NCBI GenBank assembly: GCA_033442325.1
Contig: JAWQFM010000007.1
Span: 1,396,351-1,460,350, forward strand
From: Salpingoeca rosetta
Taxonomy: Eukaryota > Protista > Choanoflagellata
DNA: 64,000 nucleotides
Direction of reading: 5' to 3'
This document shows, piece by piece, positions 1,728 through 21,246 of this stretch. A program made the position numbers and the translations under genes. Every line of letters begins with the position of its first letter. Position 1 is the first letter of the stretch. The notes beneath the pieces are model-generated. The model ran no database searches, had not been told where the DNA came from, and worked only from the letters and a program-made list of their open reading frames with translations.

Positions 1728-3213
1728 TGTGCTACGTGTGTATTGTTATTGTTATTGTGGTTGTGTGTGTGTGTCGTGGGTTTGTGTGTATTGTGGCTGT
1801 GTGTGTGTGTGTGTGGAGGTGTGCGCCCTGCATTGCAGCACCCTTGCACTGCAACGCCCTGCATTGCAACGCCCTGCATCTCTGTTGGCGCTCCTTTACG
1901 TGTGCATTTCTTTTTCAGGTGTTTTGTCATTTTGGTGTTCTTGATCTTGTTTTTGTGAGTGGAGTCGAGTTTCCTTCGCTGCCACTCTTGTGCAGGCACA
2001 AGATGTGCTGTTTGTTGTGTTTATGGATTGACGATGACTGTAGTGCAAGCGAGAAGCGAGCGAGAGTGTTTAGTCAGCGACCCTGTTTGACGGCAACGTC
2101 ACCCGAGTCAAAAACTACCATACATACATACATCCATCCATGGACTCGTTGCGAGCTCCAATGTTGCAGAGCTCCAAACCAGGGTGATGAGGCAACGTCA
2201 CACAACAACACCACACCAACAAACACGCCAACAAAACACAACAACGTGCAAAACTCGTTTGCGTGCCACCTGGCTGGTTGGCATAGGCATGCTAGGCATG
2301 GCATGTTGCTGGGGCCGTGGTTGTTGCGTGGGTGCGTGCCCTCGTTTGCGTCAACCGCCAGCACCCTCCAAGCAAGCAAGCAAGCCCAGCAAGCAAGTAA
2401 GCGTGTCGTTTCCGGACAAGCAGAACAAACGCCCAAACCGCACAACGCCACGTCATGGTATTGTGCGGAATATTGACTGAAATCTTGTACAATTTATCGT
2501 CAACCGGGAGTCCTACCCCGGGTTTTTTTTGCGCCGGTGTGCTCATGCTTGGCTCGTCAGCACTTGTTCTGAAAGCAGCAAGGCAACCCAACGGCCAGCG
2601 TGGAAACGCAGAAGCCGCCAGCAGGGACACCGCAAGTGCGCATGCGCAAGCGAAAAGCACTCCGAAGCCGCGCAGCAGCGCAGTTCCCGCAGCCCATCAG
2701 CACTCGCCCGCGCACGCTCTCGTCGTTGCTCTTGTGCGTCGTGCCGTGTGTCGTGCCTTGTTTGGAGTGCTGTGCGCGTGTGCGTGTGCGTGTGCGCTTG
2801 TGCGTGCTTCCTGGGCTGTGCTCACATTTTTCTCACCACCACCAAACCTCGGCAGCTTCGTCTCTTTTGCGAAGCGCACGGGGTTCCGGAGGGCTCCGAG
2901 ACACGAAACCACCACCACCACACCCAATAGACTAGCTGCTGCCACAAAACATCACCGAGTTCCCATATTCCCCCTTCTGTCGTTCTCTCCCTCTCCTCCT
3001 CCTCCTCGTCCTTCCCTTCTTCTTCCATTCTTTCTGCCATTCTTTCCCTTCCTCCACCTCGACTCGTCTGCTACGACTGTTCGATCCCTGAACCAGCTCC
3101 CCCTATTCCACCCCCCCCCTTCCAACCTTTCTCTGTGTTTTGGCTTGAACCATCTATCTCCCTGGGTTGTTCTTGTTTGTCTTCTCCCTTGAGCAACGGC
3201 ATTTTTTCCTGTG

Positions 3214-5280
3214 ATGCACAGAGTTTGCTTTGCGGGCCACTCCTCGACCCATGCATCTCCTTTCTGCTCCGTCGCTGGTGAGGAAGACGACGACGACGAC
3301 GACGACAATCGGCGCTCACCGCTCAACCTCTTTGACGAAACACTTCACACTGCTTCAAGCGCAGGCAGCAGCAACAGTCTTCACTCTACTGACGCTGAAG
3401 CCTTCGTGAGCTTCCCGGACAGCACCAGCGCCGCCCTTTACTCAACCACCAAGCTTCCTCCGCCGCTCCCGCTTCCCTTGCCTCAGCAGCAGGAACAAGA
3501 AGAGCACGAAGATCTTGAGGACGACGAAGGCCTTGTCCTTAACCTCTCCCCTTTGTCCAACTGCCCCGCCGAGTGCGACGCCACCTCTCTGCCTTTCCCC
3601 GACTTTGGGAACCCCTTCAAGACGGCAAGCCAACAAGAAGCACGCTCATCCTCCGACGCTGCCGCGCCAACCACCAATGTTGCGACGGCGCCAACGGTCG
3701 AGTTTTTCGACCTCCTAGCGCAGGATCAGCCTTCGCCAGGCTTCTTCCCCTTGCCGCCAGGCACCCCGCCTCCGGCCTCGTCCTCCGCCGCGGCCCAGAC
3801 GACTGGCGCTACCGCCAGATCAGCCGTCACGACCAACGGCAACGGCAACGTCACGCCAGCCTCAGCTGCTGGCACGACCATGACTGATGCCGTGATGGTG
3901 GGCGGTTTGCAGGCGTCGGCCCAGGTGACGCAGATGTCTGTGAGCAGGGCGCAGGGCATGCCCCCAGGTGTGCCCGCCACGGCAACGCTGGACCTGTGGA
4001 ACGTGGACTTTCTCAACGAGGCAGCGTGCTCGTCGTCGCCGACCCCGCCCGCCATGCTGAGCGCTCTGGCGCCCTACATGCCGCAGGACGCCATGGTGAA
4101 CGGCGCTGCCGGCAATCAGGGTGTTGCGCAGGCATCGGCTCGCCGCTCGTGCCTAGCACCGCGCCGCTCTGGGCAGCACAGCATGCCGCCAGCCCTTTCG
4201 CTGGCCGCCAGCAACTACAACAACTACGCCAGTTACAGCACCTTCACGGCCAACGCCAACCCCGGCAATAACAACACCAACAGCAGCAGCAGCGCAAATC
4301 CAGCGGTTTCGTACGCGTACTCGCCCAGCGGCGTGCCCGCCGTGCTGGTGCCGATGATGGCGCCACAGCACTCGGCAGCGGCCCTCACCCACGCTGGCAA
4401 CATGGTGGAAGGCCGTGTCGCGAGCACCGGCACGGGCACCATCACGGGGAACAGCAGCACGTACAGCGGGAGCGACCTCAAGACGGAGGAGCAGCTCTCC
4501 CCCTCGCCTGTCGCCAACATGCTCTCCGAGGACGATGAACAGGCGCTCGACTTTGCCATGTGCGGCGACCCCATGTTGATGGACACGCGCACGACAACGC
4601 CGCCGCCGCCAGCGAACCGGCTGCGCGCACCGATGACCCGCGGTCGCAGGCGCAGGCGCAGCAAGCGGCAGCAAGCAGCTGTCTCGCAGGCATCGCAGCC
4701 GCACGTGATGACCATGATGCCTGCAAGCATCAGCGCCATGGCGAGCAGCAGCATGTCCTCAGCGGGCTCTGCACCGCGGAGAAGCCTGCGCCAGAAGCAA
4801 CAGGGCCAAGTGCACAAGCAGCGCAGCAAGCAGTCCAAGCGCCACCAGCAGCAGCAGGAGGAGGAGGAGGAGGAGGAGCAAGAGACCTCGCCTCCATCGT
4901 CCAACTCGAGTGATCACGGGCACAGCAGCGCCCATCACCCGCACAAGCGCGGCGTGAAGCTCGAGTCCAAGTACCAGTGGGACGAGCACCTCCTCACCAT
5001 GCCACGTGCTGAATTTGTGCACTTTACGCGCACCAACAAGCACCTGACTGCGGATCAGCTGCAAGACCTGCGACAGACGCGCCGCCGCATGAAGAACAGG
5101 CTGTACCAGAAGGATGCCCGGGACAGGCGGTTCATCAGGGTTGCGCGGGAGCGGGAGTTGACCCGCCACCAGCTGCAGGCGTCTGTGCGCCGTCTCTCTG
5201 CACGCTGCCTTCGTCTTGAGGCCATCATCCGCGCCCACTGCCCAGAACAGCTCACCACCCTCACCGAAGAGCAGCTGTGA
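3214..5280 (+). CDS. Maf-type bZIP transcription factor, single exon
   Basis: ATG 3214 to TGA 5280, no introns. The C-terminal WDEHLLTMPRAEFVHFTR...LTADQLQDLRQTRRRMKNRLYQKDARDRR resembles the Maf extended homology region plus basic region (N-x-x-Y-x4-R), followed by Leu heptads. The long N-terminus is acidic and Pro/Ser/Gln-rich. Confidence 0.8.
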   Translation: MHRVCFAGHSSTHASPFCSVAGEEDDDDDDDNRRSPLNLFDETLHTASSAGSSNSLHSTDAEAFVSFPDSTSAALYSTTKLPPPLPLPLPQQQEQEEHEDLEDDEGLVLNLSPLSNCPAECDATSLPFPDFGNPFKTASQQEARSSSDAAAPTTNVATAPTVEFFDLLAQDQPSPGFFPLPPGTPPPASSSAAAQTTGATARSAVTTNGNGNVTPASAAGTTMTDAVMVGGLQASAQVTQMSVSRAQGMPPGVPATATLDLWNVDFLNEAACSSSPTPPAMLSALAPYMPQDAMVNGAAGNQGVAQASARRSCLAPRRSGQHSMPPALSLAASNYNNYASYSTFTANANPGNNNTNSSSSANPAVSYAYSPSGVPAVLVPMMAPQHSAAALTHAGNMVEGRVASTGTGTITGNSSTYSGSDLKTEEQLSPSPVANMLSEDDEQALDFAMCGDPMLMDTRTTTPPPPANRLRAPMTRGRRRRRSKRQQAAVSQASQPHVMTMMPASISAMASSSMSSAGSAPRRSLRQKQQGQVHKQRSKQSKRHQQQQEEEEEEEQETSPPSSNSSDHGHSSAHHPHKRGVKLESKYQWDEHLLTMPRAEFVHFTRTNKHLTADQLQDLRQTRRRMKNRLYQKDARDRRFIRVARERELTRHQLQASVRRLSARCLRLEAIIRAHCPEQLTTLTEEQL

Positions 5281-7067: not shown

Positions 7068-8850
7068 CTACGCCATGTCATCCCCGCCCAGGAGGGCCTT
7101 GAGCATGCGCTCCACATCATCTGGTGAGAACCGCAGATACTTGTGCGGGTTCTTCTGCGAGAAGCCCGATGTGCTGTATGCGTTGTTGAACGCCACAAAG
7201 CGCGGCAGCACCGTGTCAAGGTTCGTCTGCGTGAGCTCTTCCCGCAACGCCTGCGTATGCGTGCGTGTGTGTGCATGTGTGTGAATGTGCATGTGTGTGT
7301 GTGTGTTAAAGCAAGGCAGGAAGGGGCTGTTGTGTGCAGCAGGGCACGTGCTGCCAGTGACACGGAGACCACAGCTACGGCAGCTCCATAACCACACACC
7401 TGGCTTGGAATGGCAAACTCCTGCTGTAGGGCCTGAATCCGTTCCAGCTCCGTGTTGAACGTGGTGTAGCGCTCCTTGATCATATCCCTTTCCCGCTTCG
7501 ACAGCGGTGTTGACACCGCCTCAACCTTCAACGCGCCCTGTAACCATGACGGTGACGATGGTGTTTGAGGGAGTGAGTGAGTGAGCGAGTGAGTGAATGC
7601 ACGAATGGTGTGTGCAGTGATGCCAGTCAATGCGTCGAGTGGCACAACAGCAGATACACACGTGCACGTACACGTACACGCACACACACACACGCGCACG
7701 TACACGTACACACACACGTACACGTACACAAACACAAACACACACGCACGCACTCGACGCCAATGAAAGCGGTAAAAGCAGTGTGCTTGAAAGCGCCACC
7801 ACTGTTCGTTGTCAGCTGACGCTGCCAGGCGTACCAGAAGCGTTTCCCATGTCGTCTTGAGGTAAAGGTCCTTTGCCGTCTCCACAAGCTCCTCAAAGTG
7901 CACAACAAGCTGCAGAATGCACACACACACATACACACACAGGCAATCGTCAAATCTTGGCTGGTGTCACGTGTCGCAACGTGGCAGATGCCATACAAAC
8001 AGCAGAGGCTGAACACACACACACACACGCACATACACAAGCAAACACACACGCGCGCGCGTACACACGCACACACCTCACGCAGTGTTTCCTCCGTCAC
8101 ATGGGTTTCAAATACGTTCCCCTTGAGTGCACTGCAACCATGGAGATAAAGAGCAAGCTGAGCATACGCACAACACAGCTTGCTTCGGCTTCCAACCACA
8201 ACAGCCATGTAATCGCATCCACAAAACAAGTGGCGCGAACAAACATTGCGCAAACATTGCGCACAACAAACACAGCACCGTGCAACCGGCACACGCCCAC
8301 CTGACAATGTACGCGTAGTTGTTCATGAGAAAGACGTTGAGGATGGTCGGGTCCTCGTACGTCCGCGCCTTCAGCTCAAGATTGTCCTTCAAAGCCGTCA
8401 ACACTTGAACGGCAAACATGCAGCAGCGGGAGCAGCGAGAGGATGTGTGCGTGTGTGTAAATGTGTGTGTGTGTAAAAGTGTATGTGTGTGTGTGTGTAA
8501 ATGTGTGTGTGTGTGAGTGTGTGTGTGTGTGTGTGAGTGGGTGTGTTGTGTGTTTGTGGATGAGGGTCGTGAATGAGCAGAAAATGTTGATGTGAGCAGG
8601 AAAGCAGCAGGAGAAACATACACACGTACACCTACACCCACGCACACACCTGAGGAAAGCCAGTTTGTGAGGGTGACTTTGGCCTCTGTGCCCGCGATCC
8701 AGTGCATGCCGCGATCGGCGTTTGCGCTCTGCTTGTGGGCGAGCACAGACGCGGCTGCCTCATGATACTCCATGACACTCACAACAAACTTGATGGAGCG
8801 GCTTGTCAGCTCGTGCACTGTCCCGTCCTCAGGCAGCTTCTGCAGTGACG

Positions 8851-8923
<73 letters not shown>

Positions 8924-9392
8924 CGTGTTAGTATGTGACAACTGCTTCAGCACACAAATGCGCAAGTGCGCCACACAAGCTGCCTCCTGCCACCACTCAC
9001 CCCTCCCCCCTCCCTTCATGTGTAATGTGGCAATCGCACGTGTGCCGGCGGATCGCTGCTCACGGAATCCTGGAACCCGAGCAGCACCGCCCGCACAACC
9101 GCTGCCAGGCTGTGCACACGTGAAGGTGTAAGCGAACAGCAGGGCATGTGTGTGAATAGGTGAGGAGCTAAGTCACAAAGTCAGTCGGTAAGTTTGGCTG
9201 AAGGAGCTTCGCATAGTGATGATCACCGTTTGGCACAGGAGACCGAAGATGGGTGGCGTGCAAACAATCGTGAGCATCTGCAGGTGCACATGTGTTGATC
9301 GTACTCGAGCTGCGCCTGGAAGAAGCGGCGTCGATGCTCCGATGTGTCCGTGGCGTCAAAGACGGCAACGAAATACGGCGCCTGATCATCAC

Positions 9393-9489
<97 letters not shown>

Positions 9490-10187
9490 GCGCGCGCAGG
9501 GGCAGGAGGCGATCGAAGAGGGGGAGAAGAGAAGGGAATTGAGGGTGAGCTGAAGTGGTACACAACGCATCAATGCACTTCGCACCAATGCACGTGCCAC
9601 AGGAATGTAATGCAAATCAACACAAGGGTGGGGGGTTCAGGTGGTGCATACGAGCGCATGGAGGCGGCGAAGAACATCAAACGCAGCCAGCGTGGAAAAG
9701 TACTGGTGTTGCGAGCTTTGCATGCTGCAAACAGACAACCGCCACAGAAACACATGTGGAAGTGCACACGGTGTCAGTCACAGCGTCAGAGACCCCCAGC
9801 CAACCCACGACGCCTTCATGGAGTGCTGAAATAGACCGCTCACCACCACATCAGGCGAAATGCATGCACATTACATACACCCGCACATGTACACGCACAC
9901 ACACAGACAGACACATACAGACGAGGTTTCCACATGCGGGTGGTTATTAGTGTCGAACACGACCGCACCCGGTAGCTGTGGTGAGTTTGCGAAGCTTGAG
10001 GAGCAGGGTGTCGAGTGTTTGATCGCACACGTCCGACAGCACACGCGCACAGTAACCTGAATACACCACGAGTGTTGGAAATGAAAGAGGTGACAACGCT
10101 CGTGCAAACAACGACACGAACACACGCACACTCACATACACACACATACACATGCACACACATACACACGGAGGCACGCACGTACAC

Positions 10188-10218
<31 letters not shown>

Positions 10219-12919
10219 TCCACATCCACATACACATACACATACACATCCACATCCACATAGACATACAGACGTCAACCGCGCAGCAGCTTTATGGTCG
10301 TACGTCGAGGAAGGAAGGCGCAAAGGGTGGCGTGCTCATGGCGAAGGCATGCAAGACACACGTCCAGAAACTCAAGCAACGGCTCTGTGCCCTGTGCAGC
10401 CCATGCATACAACACAGGTGAACGCATACATGCACATAGTGAGTGGATGACTGACACGAACTTGAGAAACACACAGTGGATGTCCACATGCACGTGCTCC
10501 TAAACAAGTTGGTGTGTGGTGTGTGTGTGTGATGAGAGTGCATGGCAGCCTTTGTCATCATCGTTCTCCAACTTTCTCGTAAGCGTCGGTGGCCGTCCGA
10601 TCCGCGTCCGGTTGCGTCTGAATCGAAAACAAACAAGGAAAAGCGCAGCCAGACGGGTTGTGAGTGCTGGACTGAGGATTACACACATGTTTCCCACGGC
10701 GACCGCGGTAGCACACTCAAAGCGAACCGTGCAACACGCACGTATCACATACCACGCCTCATATACCACACATGACATACCACGCATGACATCACGCTAT
10801 CAACTGACCGCCCTGCCTGGCGACCCCATGATCTGGCTGTGTCTGCGAATGGAATCAACGCGGGATTTACGCAGCAGCGACGACGTACGATGCAGCACAC
10901 CCTGGACCTGGTCGAGAGGGGATCACAGTCGATGGCAGTCGCGTGAGAACTCGCCCAGGTGGTGCTGGTGGCGGCAGCCGTGTTGGTGTTGTGCTCGTGA
11001 CTAGCAAAACTCGGGATCACTGAAGCACTGAAGCACTGGAGCAAGAAACAACAAGACAACAACGACAGTACGGACGAGCAACAGCGGCGCGCACGTGTGC
11101 ATGTACCTTCTTGGCTGCGCGGGCGGGTGTCCCCGCCAAACCCTGCCTGCTTCGTCCCCTGGCATGCATAACGCAGTGGCGATACGTGAGCAGCAAGTGA
11201 GAAGGAAACTGGCTTGTCCAGGCAAGATGCACAACAGATAAGAGAGAGCATGAGCGCGTGCTATGCATACGGCCATGAATGCACAATGGCAGATAGAGAC
11301 ACCGACAATCAGACAATCAGACACACGCACATATACACCCGCACACATTCACACACTAGCACGTACACACATGAGCACACAAACGAGCACACGCGGGTGC
11401 AGACGTACGCTGGCGTGGATGGGCGATTATCTGGGGCGAGACCGGCGAGGGTCAACTCCATGGGAACGCGGCGCACCCTGGCGGTGATGTCAACGCACTC
11501 GTCAGCGTGTGTGGAGGTGATGATCATCCATTCAGCCAGCGTCTTCAGCGTGGTGATGGTTTCCGTTGACAGTGACGTGTGCACCTCTGGTGCTTCGTGT
11601 GGCGGCACCGCTGTCAGTGCAAACCCGCGCAATGCAACCGGGTGTGTGAGCTTGACCAAAGGGTATTTGTATGGATGATGTCGTGGTGGCTGAAGCAAGA
11701 AACAACAACCATTGTAGCACCATGTGTCTGTGTGTGTCTGTGTGTGTGTCTGTGTGTGTGTCTGTGTGTGTGTGTGTCTCCGTCTCTCTCTCTCTCCCTC
11801 TGTCTTTCTCTGTCACACACACACACACACACGCACGCACGCACTCTCTCTCATACACACACACTCACACACACACACACACTGTGTGTGAATACGGACC
11901 GGCCAGGCGCAGTTGCGTCTGCGAGTCGATGAGAGCGAGGATCTCGGCCTCCTCCAGTGGAAGACTGTACCGTTCCAGCACCTCGCCATACTCTTGGATG
12001 AGCGCATCGTGTGATCGCTTGCGCATGGTGCGTAAGCGGGAGAGCTCCGGGTTGTTGGCGTTGTTGTCTTCAAAGTAGGCGATGGCTTCGTCCATCTCCT
12101 TCACAGTGTCAATGTACTCCTCCAGCTCGTAAGAAGGCCCCCTGTCCAATCGCTTCTGCGCCACATGAGCCAGTCTGTAGTACCGCTCCACACCCGACAG
12201 CAGCTCCGACACTTGCTCAATGTTGTCACGTGCCCTGGTGAGTGAGTGAGTGAGTGAGTGAGTGAATGTATGAGTGAGTGAATATGAATGTGAGTGAGTG
12301 AGTGAGTGAATATGAATGTGAGTGAGTGAATGAGTAAGCAAGAGTGAGTGAGTGAGTGTGTGTGTGAGTGTGTGTAAGTGTGCATGCTTTCCTCTGATCA
12401 TTGGGTGTGACACATGCCGAGACGAACCGAGTCAAGACAGACGTCTCCTCGTAGACGGGTTCGATCGAGTGCTGGAGATCTTCCAAGCGCTGCAGGAACG
12501 AGGACAGCAAGTTCTCCTGCAACCAAACACACAACGGTGCAAGCAGATGTGTGTTGATTGGAAGGCGCAGTGGAGAGGCTTCTCGCGCGACACCACAGCC
12601 AGATACCGCCTCAGACACAAGCACACGCGCATGCGCATGCACGCACGCATACCATGCGATCTGTAGCCTGGGACAGGTTCTTTACATTCTCTTGATAGAA
12701 GCGAAGCTGCAATACAAGGGGGGGGGTGTGTGGGTGGGTGTGGTGCCTTTGGTGAGACACAGTGCAACGCGCAAGTCAACACTGATACGTGCAGACGAAC
12801 ACACACACACACACACACATACATGGACAAACCTTCTCCTCGTCGTGCTTGAGCCGCTGCTGCGTCTTGTGCCGCAGGTCGGCCACACCATCGTTGCGGC
12901 GTTCAAACTCTGCACTCAT
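7068..12919 (-). CDS. EXOC7: Exocyst complex component 7 (Exo70), multi-exon
   Basis: ATG 12919 (MSAEFERR) to TAG 7068. Exons carry Exo70 motifs: ELEEYIDTVKEMDEAIAYFEDNNANNPEL, LPEDGTVHELTSRSIKF, LKDNLELKARTYEDPTILNVFLMNNYAYI, ERDMIKERYTTFNTELE and KNPHKYLRFSPDDVERML. Checked junctions are GT-AG. Confidence 0.95.
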
Positions 12920-12995: not shown

Positions 12996-14354
12996 ATGCT
13001 GAGCGAGCGGATTAGGAGTGCTGTTGTTGGTGTGGGTGATGGTGGTGGTGGTGGCGGTGAGATGAAGAGGAAGAGAAAGAAGCAAAGGAGGGAAGTGGGA
13101 GGTGAGGCTGGGCGGGGAACGAAGGGTGATGGCGAGAGGCCAAAGTATGCATGTCGCAAGTGCAGGCGGGTGTTTATGAACGCGTCTGCTTGCCGCCGAC
13201 ACGCGCTGCTGTGCGGGACTGGGGTCCGCTTTGCATGCAGCTGCTCCCACACTCCATTTGCGTCCTTCGAAGCGCTCCGACTGCATGCCCGCCGCCTCAA
13301 GCACGACATCCCAGAGCACACGCAGGCCTTGCGCAGGCAGCTGGCCGAAGTGTCAGCTGCGAGCATCCCTGATGTCATCGTCCTTGGCGCTGCCCACAAC
13401 ACGGCAGCGACAACAGGAACAGCGGCAATGACGACAACAGAAACAGCAGCGAGAACCGCCACCGCAACGCAGCTGACCACCACAACACCTGTGACGGTGA
13501 CAACACAAACCATGGTAAGAATGGAGACGACTTCTGGTACGCCAAACCTGCGTGCGTCCTCCTCAACATACCCACAGAGGGCAACCCACACAATGACCAG
13601 CAGTATCGGGACCAGCACCGACTTTGGCAACCTCGCATCAACTCGACACGCAGACGCTGCAGCTGCTGCCACCTCGACCCATGGACAGGCACAAGTGCAC
13701 GATGTTTGTCTTCAAGCTGGAGGCATGCTCGGTGGCCAGCCTGCGATGGCAGTACACGCTGCAAATACAAGCTTCAACAGCGTGAGCACGAGCACCAACA
13801 CACCCAAGAGCGCGGTCGACATCGCTGCCTGCCACACGGAAACGCAAACGACGGAGCTGGACATGCTTGCGGCAAGCCACCTCTTCTCCCTGCCACCAGG
13901 GCCCTCCCCAGACGTCTGCACGGCCACCTGCCAGACCGAGTTTGAACAGGACGGTGCCTTGCCGCTCTACCTGTGCTCCGATGACCAGCAGGAGGCACCA
14001 CCAACCCCGTCGCTTCCTCCACTCGCTACGGCCCCGTCGACGTCAACACCTTCCCCACGCACAACAACAACAACAACAACAACAACAAAGGCAACAGCGA
14101 CGACAGCAACAGCGTCAAGCGCAGCGACGGCTGCAGGCATGACCTCTGTTGCGCTTGGTTGCAGTGAGCTGGACATTCTCGCGGCGACGGGTGTCGGGGC
14201 CACTGATCCACAACACATGGACAGAGGCACGTCCCCTTTGTTCCACACAGTGGGCACAGACTGCTCAGAGCTCTTTCATGACATGGCGACAGACTGCGAC
14301 GACCTTCTCTTTGCAGATGCCTCCACGGACTGCTTTGATCTCTTGTTCTCATAG
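12996..14354 (+). CDS. ASCIZ/ATMIN-like C2H2/C2HC zinc-finger protein with multiple putative LC8 (DYNLL)-binding motifs, single exon
   Basis: In-frame ATG at 12996 (or 13062). NLS-like MKRKRKKQRR. YACRKCRRVFMNASACRRHALLCG and FACSCSHTPFASFEALRLHARRLKHDIP resemble ATMIN fingers 3-4. The disordered tail has TTQT, TETQT, TCQT, GTST, RGTSP and three TDC motifs. Confidence 0.7.
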   Translation: MLSERIRSAVVGVGDGGGGGGEMKRKRKKQRREVGGEAGRGTKGDGERPKYACRKCRRVFMNASACRRHALLCGTGVRFACSCSHTPFASFEALRLHARRLKHDIPEHTQALRRQLAEVSAASIPDVIVLGAAHNTAATTGTAAMTTTETAARTATATQLTTTTPVTVTTQTMVRMETTSGTPNLRASSSTYPQRATHTMTSSIGTSTDFGNLASTRHADAAAAATSTHGQAQVHDVCLQAGGMLGGQPAMAVHAANTSFNSVSTSTNTPKSAVDIAACHTETQTTELDMLAASHLFSLPPGPSPDVCTATCQTEFEQDGALPLYLCSDDQQEAPPTPSLPPLATAPSTSTPSPRTTTTTTTTTKATATTATASSAATAAGMTSVALGCSELDILAATGVGATDPQHMDRGTSPLFHTVGTDCSELFHDMATDCDDLLFADASTDCFDLLFS

Positions 14355-14412
14355 CGCAGCAAGGTTGTGTGTGTGTGTGTGTGTGTGCGTATGTGTGTGC
14401 ACGTGCGTGCGT

Positions 14413-14466
<54 letters not shown>

Positions 14467-15372: not shown

Positions 15373-15449
<77 letters not shown>

Positions 15450-16035: not shown

Positions 16036-19000
16036 TTACGCCTGAATGGTGGCCTTGGAAAGAACGCCAGTGCCAAGCTGCATGCACTCTGCGACAAACG
16101 ACTCCATATCAAACACAAGCTGGCCATCCTTCTGCGTTGATTACCACACAAATCACAACCGGCAATGGAGTTGTGAGGGAGTTGAAGTGATCGAGGATGA
16201 CATACAATGGGCGCAAGTGCGCGTGCACCATGAAAGAAAACAGTGACGCGATGAACAGCAACAGGGACACGAAGCCAACACACCCACGGAAAACACACAC
16301 ACACACACAACATGCACGCATAAGGCGGCATCGTCGAATCGCACACGCACCTCCATGCGCGTGGCGGCAGTCTGCGTCATCTTGAACGGATGTGGCTGCT
16401 TCACCTGCACCAAGACCATCATCAAGCGTCTCAGTCGCTGAGATCATGCACGACGAATCACACCCACCCCAACACAAGTAACGAGTGTGTCATGCAAAAC
16501 GCACACCACGCACACAACACACACACAAAACGCACACAACACACAACACACGCACAAAACACATACAAAACAACACGCACACACACACACACACAAAACA
16601 CACACAAAACAACACACACACACACACACAAAACACATACAAAACAACACACACACACACCACGCACACCTTTGGGTTGACGGCTGCGCAGATGACAGGA
16701 CCGCCGAGCTCGTCGTACCAGAACATGACCGTGTCCTTAAACTGCCGCTGCAGGTCTGCAAAGAGCTGCGCAACAGGGTCCCAGCCAGGCCGACCCGTGC
16801 CAACCTTGCCCTTGAGCTCAAGGTTCTTGAACTTGGGCTTGCTCACCCCACCTGACGATGACGACGACAATGTGTCATCATCTGTGCCAGTCAGCGCCTG
16901 TGTGCGACGCACGTGCGCCTCGGGGGCAATGTCAAACACAACGTCGTACGCGGCGAGTGGCGTGGAGAAGATGGTGAGGGCGTTGCCGACGGTGCCGCCA
17001 ACAAGGCCATCCCCAACAGAGCGAAGCGCAGCAGCCGCAGCCTCCTCTGCACTTCGCGCAAACCGCACTGGTGGGGATGGGAGAGGTGGTGTGGGAATGT
17101 GTGGGAATGTGTGGGAATGTGAGTTGCCTCGACATGACATGGTGGACAGCAAATACACTTGTGGATGTGTGCGAATGTGTGTGTGTGTGTGTGTGTGCGT
17201 GCGAATGTGTGTCTGCTTGCAGGCAACCAGCAAGCATGATTGGCGTGCATGGGTCAGGCGAGGTTGCGGGTGCACGCACCAAGGCGCTGGAACACAAGCT
17301 TCGATGGCGACTCGCGCGTCCACATAGAGTCCGGATCCTAATGGAAGAGAACACACAACACACGCCCAAGCAATGACAAGCGCGCAAGCACGCACGGGCG
17401 GTGAGTCAACAAGCAGACAGCCGTCAACAGGTTGTGTTGCATGTGCGCAAGGAAGAACAGACCTGTAAAGGCTCCCTGAAAGCACGCATCATCCACACAG
17501 ATACGCAGATACGCACGCATGTACATGAGTACGTACCACTGATGTGGCAACAAACATGATGGGCAGCTTCTGTCGCTGTTCACGGAAGCGCTCGCGAATG
17601 CTGGCCTTGGTGGCATCCGGCAACGAGGCTGCACATCAGAATCGGGGCAAGATGTGGTGAGTGGGAGAGAGGAGGAGGTGCTGAACGCGAGTGCATAAAT
17701 TGTGCAACGACAAAGGGGCAGCCACACTCGCACAGATAACGCGTTTCTCGGCACTGTCTCGTATTCACAAACAAATACACACACTCGCGAGCATTCCCAC
17801 AAAGTCCCACACAATTCCACACACAATCACTCATTCACTCACACACACACACACACACACACACACAATACACACAACACACAACACACAACACACACAC
17901 ATACACACACAAGCACAACGCCTGACCATCTGGGTCGACAAAGAGAGGGTCGTGGATCCAGTTGTGGGAGGCGAGGAGGTGGAGGAAGCGGAGAAAGCCC
18001 ACGTCGGGGGTGCCCGGTGCGCCGTACGGCTGATCGTGGTTGTACAGCGACAGCACCAGCAGGTCAATCAGCTCGTCCGGCACGTATGACGAGAACATGT
18101 GCGCATGGATCTGCACAGGCACAGCGATTGGAGGAAGTGCAGTGTGCAACAGGGAAAGCAAGGGAACCGTGAGGAGGAAGAAACGCTCATGCAGAGCCAC
18201 GCACCAGAACTCGCAACCACAAAGCACCACATGCTGCACTCTCCACAACACTTATCCTCACAAACAATCTCCACAACAAGAACAATCTCCACAATAAGAA
18301 CACATTACACATCTCGCCGTGTGTCCCTGCGTTCGGCCCACACCGGTCTCAAAACGCCACCACAAGCAACAGCACAAACAAGAGCAGCAGGCAACCCACC
18401 CAGCGCTTTGCAAGACGGGTTGTGGGGCCATAGGAGGCCATCTGGACAGCAAATCCGCGGATCCAGGCGGAGAGGCGGGGCAGCACCAGCATGTCCCGTC
18501 GCATCATACGCGCCAGTGACGACATGTCCTGTGCAGCAGCAAGCAGTTCTGTTCGCTGGGCACCCTGCACCTGCTCTGCAGATGATGTGTACTCCGCCGC
18601 CTGCTTCTGCACAAGCGTCAGCTCCTGTCGCACAAAGATGACAATGCGGAACACAAATCCGCGGAAGTGCACATCGAGGTACTGGCGTGTCAGCCGCGTC
18701 GTCAGCGCCTCGCTGCTGCCGCTCTCGCTGTTCTTCGCCAGGAGCCGCGCAATTCGAATGAGAAACGCCAGCTTCACCTGCTGCAGCGCGCCAATGTCGT
18801 CCGGCCACCGCGACGAGCCCTCAAACTGCAGAATCGCCTCCATGACAGGCTGCCACTCGCCGCTGGTGTTGACCGCCTTCCCTGCGTGCTCGGCAGCGCC
18901 GGCGACCGTGGCTGCCGTGGCCGCCTGCGGGAACGGGTCCGTGAGGCGGAATGTCGACGACACGCAGCGCAGGTCGCGCACGAGCAGCGGGAGATCAAGC

Positions 19001-19409
19001 CGCCGCACCATCTTCACCAGCTCCGTAAACGCATCGGAGGCAAGCCGCGATGCTACCATGCCGTTGTCGTCACGGGGCTTTGGCGCTTCGTCCGTTGTCG
19101 GTGCCGATGACGCTGCCGCGAGTGCGCCGGGAGCGGGTACGCCCGCGCCCGCAAGGACGGGCTCAAAGAAGAACGGCTGCATGGCAACGTGCGCAGCGTC
19201 AAGCTTGGCGTGGCGAGCAAGCACGTGCAGGGCAATCCACTTGACGAGCAGGTGGCGCTGGTGGGGCGCGCAGTCCCACACGACACCGTGGCGAAGGGAG
19301 CCATCGGCCAGAGCCCGCAGCGTGGCCTTGTCACCCCAGAAGTTGACAAACGCCTCCACGTCGCTCTCGTCCGTGGACGGCAGAATGTCGGCGGTGCGGT
19401 AGCACGTCT

Positions 19410-19470
<61 letters not shown>

Positions 19471-21246
19471 TGCGTGTTGATAGGAGAGCGCGTGAGCATG
19501 CATTCGGTTCATGTCACCACAGCGAGGACGGCAAAGTACACACAAAAAGTGTGTGCACGTGTTTCGACGTGCAAATGTGAACAACAAGCACTTCATCAAG
19601 CGTGGGTGTCAGCCCTGCAAGCACGGTGCATTGGTTGCGGACCAGGTTGAGGAGAACGCCGATGCTGATGACATGCTCCTGTGCGGCGAAGATGGACGAC
19701 GGCGGAGCGCCTGTGATCTTCCACGGCTGCTGCGGCGTGGGCAGCGCTACAACAACGGGTGCGCGGTCGCCGAGCCCGCGGCGAAGCAGGACGGGGAGGA
19801 GGCGGCTGGCAAGGTCAATCCAGTTGCCGGCACGGTCAAGCAGCTGCGCAGGGTACTTGCTGACAACCTCAGGCGAGAGGCGCGCGTGGATCATCGTGTC
19901 AAACTTGTAGTGCGGGTCAACGGGCGACAGGAACAGCGACGAAAACGCTGTGCGTTGTGTGTGTGTGTGTGTGTATGTGTGTGTGTGTGAGTGTGTGTGA
20001 GTGTGAGTGTGTGTGTGTGTGTTTGGGTGTGTGTGTATGTGTATATGTGAGCGTGAGTGTGGAGTAGGATGAGGGAGAGATAACAGTCTGAGCAAGATTC
20101 AAGCGGAGCAAGACCAGGGTTCAAGTTCAAGCGTGAGATGCATGTTTCAAATGGAGACCGACACGCGGCAAAACCCGGAGCAAGAGACAGCAGGAATATG
20201 GGCTTGCACGTGTGACAACAAAGTGGCAAAGGAATGACGGCATGCGAAGACAAACCGTTTGTTTCGTCACTGTCGAGTAGTTTGATGGCGCGCGCTGCTT
20301 CAAACCGCAGCTCATCGTACTGGCCGCTGAACACATGCAAGCACATGAAACCAAACACACGCACACATACACGCGAATGTACGAGTAGGGGGAGAGGTGC
20401 ATGTGTTAACCAATGAGCTGGGCAACACTGGAGTGTAAGATGTTCAAAGGCATCCACAAAGCGCGTACGTTCACAAACACGCGCCACGACCATCAACAGC
20501 ACCACGAACGCCGACACAAGTACAACCAATACAGCCACCATCAACGACATGCAAAGCGCGTACATGGTCATGTGGCCGAGGAGATTACAGAAGCCAGACG
20601 GGTCAACAAAGGTGACGAGGAAGGCCTGCTGGATGTCCTCAATTGGGGGCGGAACAGCGCCAACGTCAATGTAGTGCTTCATGGCGAGCGGCTCTTCGTT
20701 CCACTTGCTTGATGCAATCACTGCCATTGTCTTCCGCACCATCTGGTACGCGCTCGCCTCGCGAGGAACCTGAGGAGTGGGCGGCGGGGCGGGAGGTGCG
20801 GTGTGAGGGGAGGCGGGATGTAACATGCAAGATGGATCAAATGTTGGGGGTAATTGACGTCTCTCGCGCAAATTTCCACCGCACACACACATGCACACAT
20901 ACATTCACACATACATTCACACTGACAAGTACAGACAACCATACACGTAACGCACACACAAGCACACGCACACACCTGTCGCTGCTGGATGAGGTGGATG
21001 AGGAGCATGGTGGCGGTGAAACCGTTCATGACGCCAAATGTGCGCGAGTTCATGCCGCGCTGGCGCAACCACGTCTGCAGCACAACGAGCAGGCATTGGG
21101 TGACGGGTGGTGTGAGGTAGTGCAGCATCGGTATGGGGAGGTGCCGAATGACACGCACACACATGATTGTGCATGTTGTCATGAACATGAATGAACACAC
21201 ACATGCACACACACAGAGCAGCAGGAGGTGGCCAGACCACAATGCA

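What the first reader, a model, noticed from the sequence alone, without database searches (positions are those of the whole stretch)
12996..14354. ASCIZ/ATMIN-like zinc-finger factor with a ladder of LC8-type motifs: possible pre-animal dynein light chain feedback circuit
Seen: two fingers with the unusual C-x2-C...H...C-G and F-x-C-x-C...H-x4-H-D-I-P spacing that I recall from ATMIN fingers 3-4, followed by a Thr-rich disordered tail with about 10 spaced motifs (VTTQT, IGTST, VSTST, HTETQT, TATCQT, DRGTSP, VGTDC, MATDC, ASTDC). Established: animal ASCIZ activates DYNLL1/LC8 transcription, is titrated by LC8 binding to many TQT sites, and affects ciliogenesis; TSP is a known LC8-motif variant. 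Inference: the LC8-sensing rheostat may predate animals, with novel TDC anchor variants and only two fingers.
Basis: partly seen in the sequence, partly recalled or inferred. Interest (0 to 1): 0.7.

Follow-up and report, generated by a model that had tools for sequence, protein, structure and literature searches.

The report
Choanoflagellate ASCIZ-like two-finger transcription factor
A single-exon choanoflagellate gene encodes a two-zinc-finger protein whose second finger looks specifically like the fourth finger of the animal factor ASCIZ/ATMIN and whose floppy tail carries a few conserved TQT-type dynein-light-chain motifs, so the animal LC8 control circuit may have an older, simpler relative, though this is not proven.

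Summary
The ORF 12996-14354 (+) is real. It equals an annotated 452-aa protein, is single-copy in a 55.4-Mb genome that earlier scan notes call Salpingoeca rosetta, and has orthologues in two other choanoflagellates, Hartaetosiga gracilis and Barroeca monosierra.

All three share the same layout:
- a C2HC finger;
- an odd F-x-C-x-C-x-H...H-x5-H-[DT]-I-P finger;
- a disordered tail.

For the second finger of all three, the best Pfam match is PF24761, "ASCIZ fourth zinc finger" (E 9e-4 to 0.04). It is the only match for two of them, but all three score below the curated cut-off. Shape searches also put ATM-interactor clusters near the top. The first finger is a generic C2HC finger and does not match the ASCIZ third-finger model. 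ASCIZ fingers 1-2 are absent.

The "ladder of about 10 LC8 motifs" is overstated. Only two TQT and one CQT have Gln at the key position, which is no more than composition predicts in this species. However, two of these sites are conserved in position and spacing across the three species, and QT is enriched in the other two tails (7 observed against about 2 expected).

The TDC repeats are real and conserved, but they look like an acidic activation motif, not LC8 anchors. LC8 binding and LC8-gene control remain untested. I obtained no true ATMIN sequence and no RNA reads.

The parts
12996..14354 (+). Single-exon coding sequence, 452 codons plus stop, of the two-finger factor (P0001)
   Evidence: Translation. 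Exact match to a recorded 452-aa protein on a 1.95-Mb contig. Single copy in the genome. Colinear orthologues P0002 and P0028.
13062..13091 (+). Basic cluster K-R-K-R-K-K-Q-R-R (residues 23-32), a probable nuclear localisation signal
   Evidence: Read from the sequence. The function is inferred. The orthologues have basic clusters after the fingers instead.
13146..13217 (+). Finger 1, C2HC type: C53-x2-C56-x12-H69-x3-C73-G (residues 51-74)
   Evidence: The ligands are invariant in three species. It is modelled as a beta-beta-alpha finger with pLDDT about 88-90. The best Pfam matches are generic: for this species only zf-C2H2_4 at E 0.012, and for the orthologues zf-C2HC_2 and the BIRD-IDD third finger. 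There is no PF24759 match.
13230..13313 (+). Finger 2, ASCIZ-fourth-finger-like: F-x-C81-x-C83-x-H85...H97-x5-H103-D-I-P (residues 79-106)
   Evidence: The only Pfam match is PF24761 C2H2_ASCIZ_4th: 19.3 bits, E 8.8e-4, model positions 2-28 of 31, cut-off 24. The same family is the best match for both orthologues. In the own-genome scan this is the only near-full-length PF24761 match. No PDB chain matches this finger alone. ATM-interactor clusters align to it at 1.4 A rmsd.
13314..13361 (+). Helix after finger 2 (residues 107-122)
   Evidence: AlphaFold2 model, helix H107-122, pLDDT about 79-88.
13365..14351 (+). Thr/Ala/Ser-rich intrinsically disordered tail (residues 124-452)
   Evidence: pLDDT below 50 throughout. 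The Atlas model has mean pLDDT 0.39. Composition is T 68, A 53 and S 32 of the 340 residues 113-452.
13491..13514 (+). Candidate LC8 site 1, V-T-V-T-T-Q-T-M (residues 166-173). Species-specific.
   Evidence: It has a canonical TQT anchor and no proline inside the 8-mer, judged by the rules in PMC6607443. It is not conserved in the orthologues.
13830..13853 (+). Candidate LC8 site 2, C-H-T-E-T-Q-T-T (residues 279-286). Conserved.
   Evidence: C279, Q284 and T285 are invariant in three species. The E-T-Q-T core is the same as in the validated Drosophila ASCIZ sites QT1 and QT2, Kd 7-14 uM (PMC5963919).
13917..13943 (+). Candidate LC8 site 3, C-T-A-T-C-Q-T-E-F (residues 308-316). Conserved, with a non-canonical CQT anchor.
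   Evidence: C312, Q313, T314 and F316 are invariant in three species. It lies 28-32 residues after site 2 in all three. The acidic +2 residue is favoured by the rules in PMC6607443. Cys at -1 is untested.
14247..14351 (+). Three C-terminal T-D-C-x-[DE]-L-[LF]-[FH] repeats (residues 418-452), a probable acidic activation motif
   Evidence: Three TDC against 0.11 expected, p about 1e-4. D441, A442, T444, D445, C446, D448 and L449 are invariant. All three repeats are present in B. monosierra, and two TDC motifs in H. gracilis. The activation role is inferred from the acidic-hydrophobic make-up.

Best explanation
This is a real, single-copy, single-exon gene for a nuclear DNA-binding factor found in at least three craspedid choanoflagellates. 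A C2HC finger and an atypical C-x-C C2H2 finger form a compact two-finger module. I read that module as a divergent relative of ASCIZ/ATMIN fingers 3-4.

The rest of the protein is disordered. It carries two positionally conserved xQT sites ([TM]QT and CQT, 28-32 residues apart), further species-specific xQT sites, and a conserved C-terminal triple acidic-hydrophobic TDC repeat.

Proposed mechanism, all inferred: the fingers bind promoters, and the TDC repeats recruit co-activators. LC8 dimers, whose peptide groove is almost unchanged from animals, bind the xQT sites and duplex or mask the tail, which tunes activity. Whether the LC8 gene is a target, which would close an ASCIZ-type feedback loop, is the least supported step.

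Shown here: the gene, the orthologues, the finger geometry, the sub-threshold ASCIZ-specific match, the disorder, the motif conservation and the conserved LC8. Inferred: DNA binding, LC8 binding, activation and the target gene.
For: - The gene is real and conserved. It matches an annotated protein exactly. Orthologues exist in H. gracilis and B. monosierra. There is one copy in the genome.
- For finger 2 of all three proteins PF24761 (ASCIZ fourth finger) is the best of 24,736 Pfam models, and the only match for two of them. E is 8.8e-4, 0.038 and 0.021, covering model positions 2-28/29 of 31.
- A generic poly-finger protein of the same genome shows no such match.
- Finger 2 alone matches no PDB chain.
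- My model of the finger pair (pLDDT 79.8) has ATM-interactor clusters in rows 2, 3 and 6 of the Atlas shape search, at 1.4-1.6 A over finger 2. The Atlas's own model gives the same result.
- The finger before it is C2HC, as in Pfam's C2HC_ASCIZ.
- Mouse ATMIN H210Q in finger 4 behaves like a null allele (PMC4197704), so the finger that is retained is the essential one.
- The tail is disordered.
- Conserved islands in the tail coincide with two xQT 8-mers and the TDC repeats.
- QT is enriched in the two orthologue tails: 7 against 2.3 expected (p 0.0026) and 7 against 2.0 expected (p 0.002).
- The E-T-Q-T core equals validated dASCIZ sites.
- Exon 2 of the S. rosetta LC8 gene is 46/48 identical to mammalian DYNLL1.
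Against: - All PF24761 scores (14-19 bits) are below the curated 24-bit cut-off.
- In a six-frame scan of the whole genome this locus scores E 0.28, and two generic fingers reach 19.1 bits on partial matches.
- PF24759 (ASCIZ C2HC) and PF24757 (the other ASCIZ C2H2-finger model) do not match.
- No true ATMIN sequence was recovered, so there is no direct or reciprocal alignment. The large search was swamped by poly-finger proteins.
- In S. rosetta, TQT and QT counts are within composition.
- The three sites are 113 and 29 residues apart, which is not a ladder.
- Many TQT peptides do not bind LC8 (PMC6607443).
- There is no expression data for this species.
Confidence: 0.5

Rival explanations
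1. This is a choanoflagellate-specific C2HC/C2H2 transcription factor unrelated by descent to ASCIZ. The C-x-C finger followed by H-x-I-P resembles ASCIZ finger 4 by chance or convergence. The xQT and TDC islands are parts of an activation or partner-binding region that has nothing to do with LC8.
For: - Scores are sub-threshold only, and comparable bit scores occur on generic fingers in the genome scan.
- Finger 1 best-matches generic or plant C2HC models, not PF24759.
- Fingers 1-2 of ASCIZ are absent.
- TQT is not enriched in this species.
- The most strongly conserved tail element is TDC, which is not an LC8-type anchor.
Against: - Three diverged orthologues all pick the same specialised Pfam family, over its full length, as the best match for finger 2.
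- Independent shape searches rank ATM-interactor clusters at the top.
- Conservation in the tail covers exactly the 8-residue window around two xQT sites, with conserved spacing.
- QT is enriched in two orthologues.
Confidence: 0.35
2. It is a true ASCIZ relative, but the two-finger protein has lost or never had the LC8 link. It acts as an ordinary activator, or in a DNA-damage role through SQ/TQ phosphorylation, with no LC8 sensing.
For: There are only 2-3 candidate sites, against 7 in fly and 11 in human ASCIZ (PMC5963919). One ancestral site (T-E-T-Q-T-F in H. gracilis, L-Q-T-D in B. monosierra) appears to be lost in S. rosetta. Four S/TQ dipeptides are present.
Against: Two xQT sites are kept under conservation while the rest of the tail drifts. 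The LC8 groove is conserved. The S/TQ sites are too few and too scattered to form an SQ/TQ cluster.
Confidence: 0.1

Closest known systems
ASCIZ/ATMIN (ZNF822) of animals, including Drosophila dASCIZ/Digitor
   Same: - N-terminal zinc fingers followed by a long disordered C-terminal domain with TQT-type motifs.
- A C2HC finger directly followed by a finger whose best Pfam match is the ASCIZ fourth-finger model.
- The E-T-Q-T core is as in dASCIZ sites QT1 and QT2.
- The coding sequence is intronless, as in fly (PMC5115829).
   Different: - Two fingers instead of four.
- Profile scores are below the family cut-offs, and finger 1 does not match the ASCIZ C2HC model.
- Two TQT plus one CQT, against 7 sites in fly and 11 in human.
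- It has conserved TDC-x-D-L-L-F repeats.
- It comes from a non-animal lineage, whereas the literature describes the ASCIZ motif array as conserved 'throughout the animal kingdom' (PMC5963919).
Generic tandem C2H2 DNA-binding fingers (Kaiso/ZBTB33, ZBTB24, Tramtrack)
   Same: Two consecutive beta-beta-alpha fingers. These are the best solved-structure neighbours.
   Different: The matches are weak only: Foldseek E 0.01-0.1, phmmer E at least 0.012. Finger 2 alone matches no PDB chain. Finger 1 ends in Cys rather than His. Finger 2 has C-x-C and H-x5-H spacing.
Plant BIRD/IDD third C2HC finger and zf-C2HC_2
   Same: Finger 1 of the orthologues scores 25.2 and 26.8 bits against these models.
   Different: These scores are also below cut-off (27 bits). 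The plant proteins have four fingers in a different order, and no ASCIZ-type finger follows. This is most likely shared C2HC geometry only.
Other multivalent LC8 clients (Nup159, Chica, Bassoon)
   Same: Several anchor motifs in a disordered chain, a layout that lets LC8 dimers duplex the chain (PMC5963919).
   Different: Those proteins are not transcription factors and have no zinc fingers. Here the candidate sites are few and widely spaced.

Membership tests
ASCIZ/ATMIN | Fourth C2H2 finger (Pfam PF24761, C2H2_ASCIZ_4th) | tested here: inconclusive
   It is the best Pfam match for finger 2 in all three species, and the only one in two. Scores are 19.3, 14.1 and 14.9 bits (E 8.8e-4, 0.038, 0.021) over model positions 2-28/29 of 31, but the cut-off is 24 bits. 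In the six-frame scan of the genome the score is 17.5 bits, E 0.28.
ASCIZ/ATMIN | Third finger of C2HC type (Pfam PF24759, C2HC_ASCIZ) directly before the fourth finger | tested here: not met
   The C-x2-C-x12-H-x3-C spacing and the position are right. However, PF24759 gives no match at E up to 10, either in hmmscan of the isolated finger or at this locus in the genome scan.
ASCIZ/ATMIN | N-terminal fingers 1-2 (Pfam PF24757, C2H2_ASCIZ; I take this model to stand for fingers 1-2, which I did not verify) | tested here: not met
   There is no match at this locus. The protein starts 50 residues before finger 1. The upstream DNA is occupied by a divergent Exo70 gene. The orthologues also have two fingers only.
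ASCIZ/ATMIN | Disordered C-terminal domain with many LC8 (TQT) recognition motifs | tested here: inconclusive
   The tail is disordered. S. rosetta has 2 TQT plus 1 CQT, not above composition. The orthologues have 7 QT each (p about 0.002). Two sites are conserved in position.
ASCIZ/ATMIN | Direct binding of LC8/DYNLL1 to the tail | not testable with these tools
   Only the prerequisite could be checked: exon 2 of the S. rosetta LC8 gene is 46/48 identical to DYNLL1. No complex modelling or binding assay was available.
ASCIZ/ATMIN | Transcriptional activation of the LC8 gene, with negative feedback by LC8 | not testable with these tools
   The LC8 gene is at G000:C5:2329718-2330313. I know of no ASCIZ DNA motif to scan for. 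This needs a knockout, a reporter assay or ChIP.
ASCIZ/ATMIN | Reciprocal best match with a bona fide animal ATMIN sequence | not tested
   No ATMIN sequence entered the session. The word-index searches found only the choanoflagellate proteins. The exhaustive search listed its top 150 hits, nearly all poly-finger proteins.
Generic C2H2 zinc-finger transcription factors | Tandem beta-beta-alpha fingers with zinc ligands | tested here: met
   The AlphaFold2 model shows two beta-beta-alpha units, mean pLDDT 79.8. Ligands are invariant in three species. The nearest PDB structures are DNA-bound C2H2 domains.

The most novel reading that the evidence does not exclude
The ASCIZ-LC8 autoregulatory rheostat predates animals. 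Under this reading, choanoflagellates keep a minimal two-finger ASCIZ consisting of fingers 3-4 only. Its conserved xQT sites bind LC8 next to a TDC-repeat activation motif, so free LC8 switches off transcription of its own gene and thereby helps set dynein and flagellar supply in a unicellular relative of animals.
Probability: 0.2. Interest if true: 0.75.

Novelty: new variant of a known kind. Interest (0 to 1): 0.55.

Why it matters
ASCIZ is the textbook case of a transcription factor that counts the product of its target gene through many weak binding sites. It is described as conserved across animals (PMC5963919). In the library I could search, no paper mentions ATMIN together with 'choanoflagellate' or 'Monosiga', or ASCIZ in connection with choanoflagellates or other unicellular organisms.

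A two-finger relative in choanoflagellates would:
- date the origin of this factor to before animals;
- point to fingers 3-4 as the ancestral core, and mouse genetics already marks finger 4 as essential;
- offer a much simpler system of 2-3 sites in which to study how the number of binding sites tunes transcription.

Tried and rejected
- **Word-index protein searches.** I searched with the whole protein, the finger region and a three-species alignment. They returned only the query and H. gracilis; Thr-rich words flooded the candidate lists.
- **Exhaustive profile search.** The finger-pair profile gave 2,137 hits, but the 150 listed were nearly all poly-finger proteins scoring by many stretches. 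Only P0028 was a new orthologue. P0114, a 68-aa metagenome fragment, was rejected as a member because its second finger best-matches ZHX.
- **Metagenome scan** with back-translated finger patterns: 89 pattern matches, none confirmed.
- **Other ASCIZ candidates in the genome.** The locus on contig C2 that scored on PF24757 and PF24761 is an ordinary poly-finger protein.
- **Feature search in the ESM Atlas.** It gave only generic C2H2 clusters. Its shape rows for the disordered tail have TM 0.15-0.21 and carry no weight.
- **TDC, TST and TSP as LC8 anchors.** Rejected on the published anchor rules and on composition statistics.
- **LC8Pred-style matrix scoring.** I did not build one, because it would have needed many typed peptides.
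- **ATMIN sequence from memory.** I recall the human ATMIN finger 3-4 pattern as C-x2-C-x12-H-x3-C-G-x2-F-x-C-x-C...H-x5-H-E-I-P. That would fit well, but it is a recollection, not a test.

Full report
**What is there**

The + strand ORF from the first ATG at 12996 to the stop at 14352-14354 translates to 452 residues. It is identical to a protein already on record for a 1.95-Mb contig. The window is G000:C7:1396351-1460350 of a 55.4-Mb, 68-contig genome. Earlier scan notes call this genome Salpingoeca rosetta. That fits my finding that the only close relatives are choanoflagellate proteins.

The genome has introns: the neighbouring Exo70 and Nrap genes are in pieces. This gene, however, is one open exon. 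Upstream, an Exo70 gene runs on the opposite strand. Its Exo70_N exon lies at 11868-12413, and a probable first exon has its ATG at 12919. Only 76 bp therefore separate the two start codons, which leaves no room for extra 5' exons encoding more fingers.

A protein search of the whole genome finds no paralogue; the next best hit has E 0.02.

**Relatives**

The word-index search found one relative, P0002 (385 aa, Hartaetosiga gracilis transcriptome). The exhaustive profile search added P0028 (416 aa, Barroeca monosierra). The H. gracilis sequence comes from a transcript assembly, so the family is expressed in at least that species.

The three proteins are colinear:
- a short N-terminus;
- the finger pair, 56% identical between S. 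rosetta and H. gracilis;
- a long diverged tail;
- a conserved C-terminus.

A metagenome scan added nothing.

**The fingers**

Finger 1 is C53-x2-C56-x12-H69-x3-C73-G, a C2HC finger. Every ligand, H85 and the I-P dipeptide are invariant in the three species.

AlphaFold2 folds the region as two beta-beta-alpha units plus a following helix. Mean pLDDT is 79.8 for the pair alone, and 71-91 for this region in the full-length model. The nearest solved structures are DNA-bound tandem C2H2 domains such as Kaiso, ZBTB24 and Tramtrack, but only weakly.

**Is it ASCIZ-like?**

Pfam now holds three ASCIZ-specific finger models: PF24757, PF24759 (C2HC) and PF24761 (fourth finger).

Evidence for a specific resemblance:
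- Scanning each finger on its own, finger 2 of all three proteins has PF24761 as its best match among 24,736 families, and its only match for S. rosetta and B. monosierra. Scores are 19.3, 14.1 and 14.9 bits (E 8.8e-4, 0.038, 0.021), covering model positions 2-28/29 of 31.
- Generic C2H2 models do not match this finger at all, and the finger alone matches no PDB chain.
- A control poly-finger protein from the same genome matches only generic models.
- Shape searches of the ESM Atlas, with both the Atlas's own model and mine, put ATM-interactor clusters at rows 2-3 (and 6). They align to finger 2 and its extension at 1.4-1.6 A.
- The mouse Atmin H210Q allele, which destroys finger 4, behaves like a null (PMC4197704). 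The finger retained here is thus the one known to be essential.

Evidence against:
- All scores are under the 24-bit gathering cut-off.
- In a six-frame scan of the whole genome this locus reaches only E 0.28, and two generic fingers score 19.1 bits on a 16-residue partial match.
- The ASCIZ C2HC model does not match finger 1. Its best matches are generic or plant C2HC models.
- PF24757 has no match here.
- I could not bring a true ATMIN sequence into the session, so no direct or reciprocal alignment exists.

My reading is that this is probably a divergent two-finger relative of ASCIZ. I do not file it as a member.

**The tail**

Residues 124-452 are predicted disordered. The tail (residues 113-452) is 20% Thr.

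In shuffles of the tail, two TQT (expected 0.55, p 0.10) and three QT (expected 2.8) are unremarkable. The "ladder of about 10" is therefore not supported in this species. The three sites lie 113 and 29 residues apart.

The family view is more favourable:
- The only conserved islands in the otherwise drifting tail are three. The first is C-x-x-x-[TM]-Q-T-[TC] (S. rosetta 279-286). The second is [TN]-C-Q-T-[ED]-F (311-316). The third is the C-terminal repeats.
- The first two islands span the 8-residue window that LC8 reads, and sit 28-32 residues apart in all three species.
- QT dipeptides are enriched in the H. gracilis tail (7 against 2.3, p 0.0026) and the B. monosierra tail (7 against 2.0, p 0.002).
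- A third shared site (T-E-T-Q-T-F in H. gracilis, L-Q-T-D in B. monosierra) seems to be lost in S. rosetta.
- The H-T-E-T-Q-T-T core matches the E-T-Q-T core of the validated Drosophila sites QT1 and QT2, Kd 7-14 uM (PMC5963919).
- The published rules are an H-bonding residue at -4, no pre-anchor proline, and an acidic or Pro residue at +2 (PMC6607443). All three S. rosetta sites meet the first two. Only the CQT site has a favoured +2 residue, and its Cys at -1 is untested.
- The partner is present. The LC8 gene is at G000:C5:2329718-2330313, and its second exon is 46/48 identical to mammalian DYNLL1. I searched the exons separately and did not join them.

**The TDC repeats**

Three T-D-C-x-[DE]-L-[LF]-[FH] units end the protein at 418-452. 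This is far above chance (p about 1e-4), and the repeats are nearly invariant in B. monosierra and partly kept in H. gracilis.

Asp at position 0 and Cys at +1 break two of the three anchor positions. The published work stresses that Gln at position 0 is the most conserved residue and that poor anchors do not bind. The acidic-plus-bulky-hydrophobic make-up is what acidic activation motifs look like, which is my inference. I therefore read these repeats as the activation or co-factor-binding end of the protein, not as LC8 sites.

**Mechanism and odds**

I put the statements in this order of confidence:
- A real zinc-finger factor with a disordered tail: about 0.95.
- Related by descent to ASCIZ fingers 3-4: about 0.6.
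- At least one xQT site binds LC8: about 0.5.
- It controls the LC8 gene with feedback: about 0.2.

The main rival (0.35) is a lineage-specific C2HC/C2H2 activator whose likeness to ASCIZ is coincidental.

**Novelty**

ASCIZ motif enrichment is described as conserved "throughout the animal kingdom" (PMC5963919). Full-text searches paired ATMIN with "choanoflagellate" and with "Monosiga", paired ASCIZ with "unicellular", and combined ASCIZ and LC8 with "choanoflagellate". None returned a relevant paper. If the relationship holds, this is a new two-finger variant of a known kind, from outside animals.

**Limits**

- No ATMIN sequence was available for direct alignment.
- No RNA reads were obtained.
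- No complex modelling was possible, and no DNA motif is known for scanning the LC8 promoter.

Noticed in passing
window 8108-12919 (-): An Exo70 exocyst gene in several exons lies head-to-head with the zinc-finger gene. Exo70_C is at 8108-9019, Exo70_N is at 11868-12413, and a probable first exon has its ATG at 12919. Only 76 bp separate the two start codons, so the promoters or 5' UTRs must be shared or must overlap.
   Followed up: partly
window 12799-12818, 14366-14387, 14415-14464, 15376-15437: (AC)n/(GT)n microsatellites of 20-62 bp bracket the gene and its neighbours. They create the long 'THTHTH' and 'CVCVCV' pseudo-ORFs seen in six-frame listings.
   Followed up: no
window 3211-5280 (+): This ORF ends in a bZIP_Maf domain (PF03131, E 8.6e-22), so it is a Maf-type bZIP factor in a choanoflagellate.
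   Followed up: no
window 18349-20904 (-): Exons of an Nrap/UTP22-type nucleolar protein (Nrap domains 2-5).
   Followed up: no
P0114 (ENA metagenome, 68 aa): A short fragment with a C2HC finger followed by a C-x2-C finger and H-S-L-P-E. It resembles the finger pair, but its second finger best-matches the ZHX model, not ASCIZ. Its origin is unknown.
   Followed up: partly
G000:C10:865961-866122 (-), locus L003: A second, weaker Dynein_light match (39.6 bits) besides the canonical LC8 gene on contig C5. It is probably a divergent LC8-family light chain.
   Followed up: no
G000:C2:1453050-1455472 (+), loci L004/L010: A His/Gln-rich protein of at least 772 aa with about 10 C2H2 fingers. One finger contains C-G-K-R-Y-A-S-K-T-T-L-R-S-H-I, which partially matches the middle of the ASCIZ fourth-finger model (19.1 bits). 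A duplicate hit lies at C2:1485992-1486039.
   Followed up: partly
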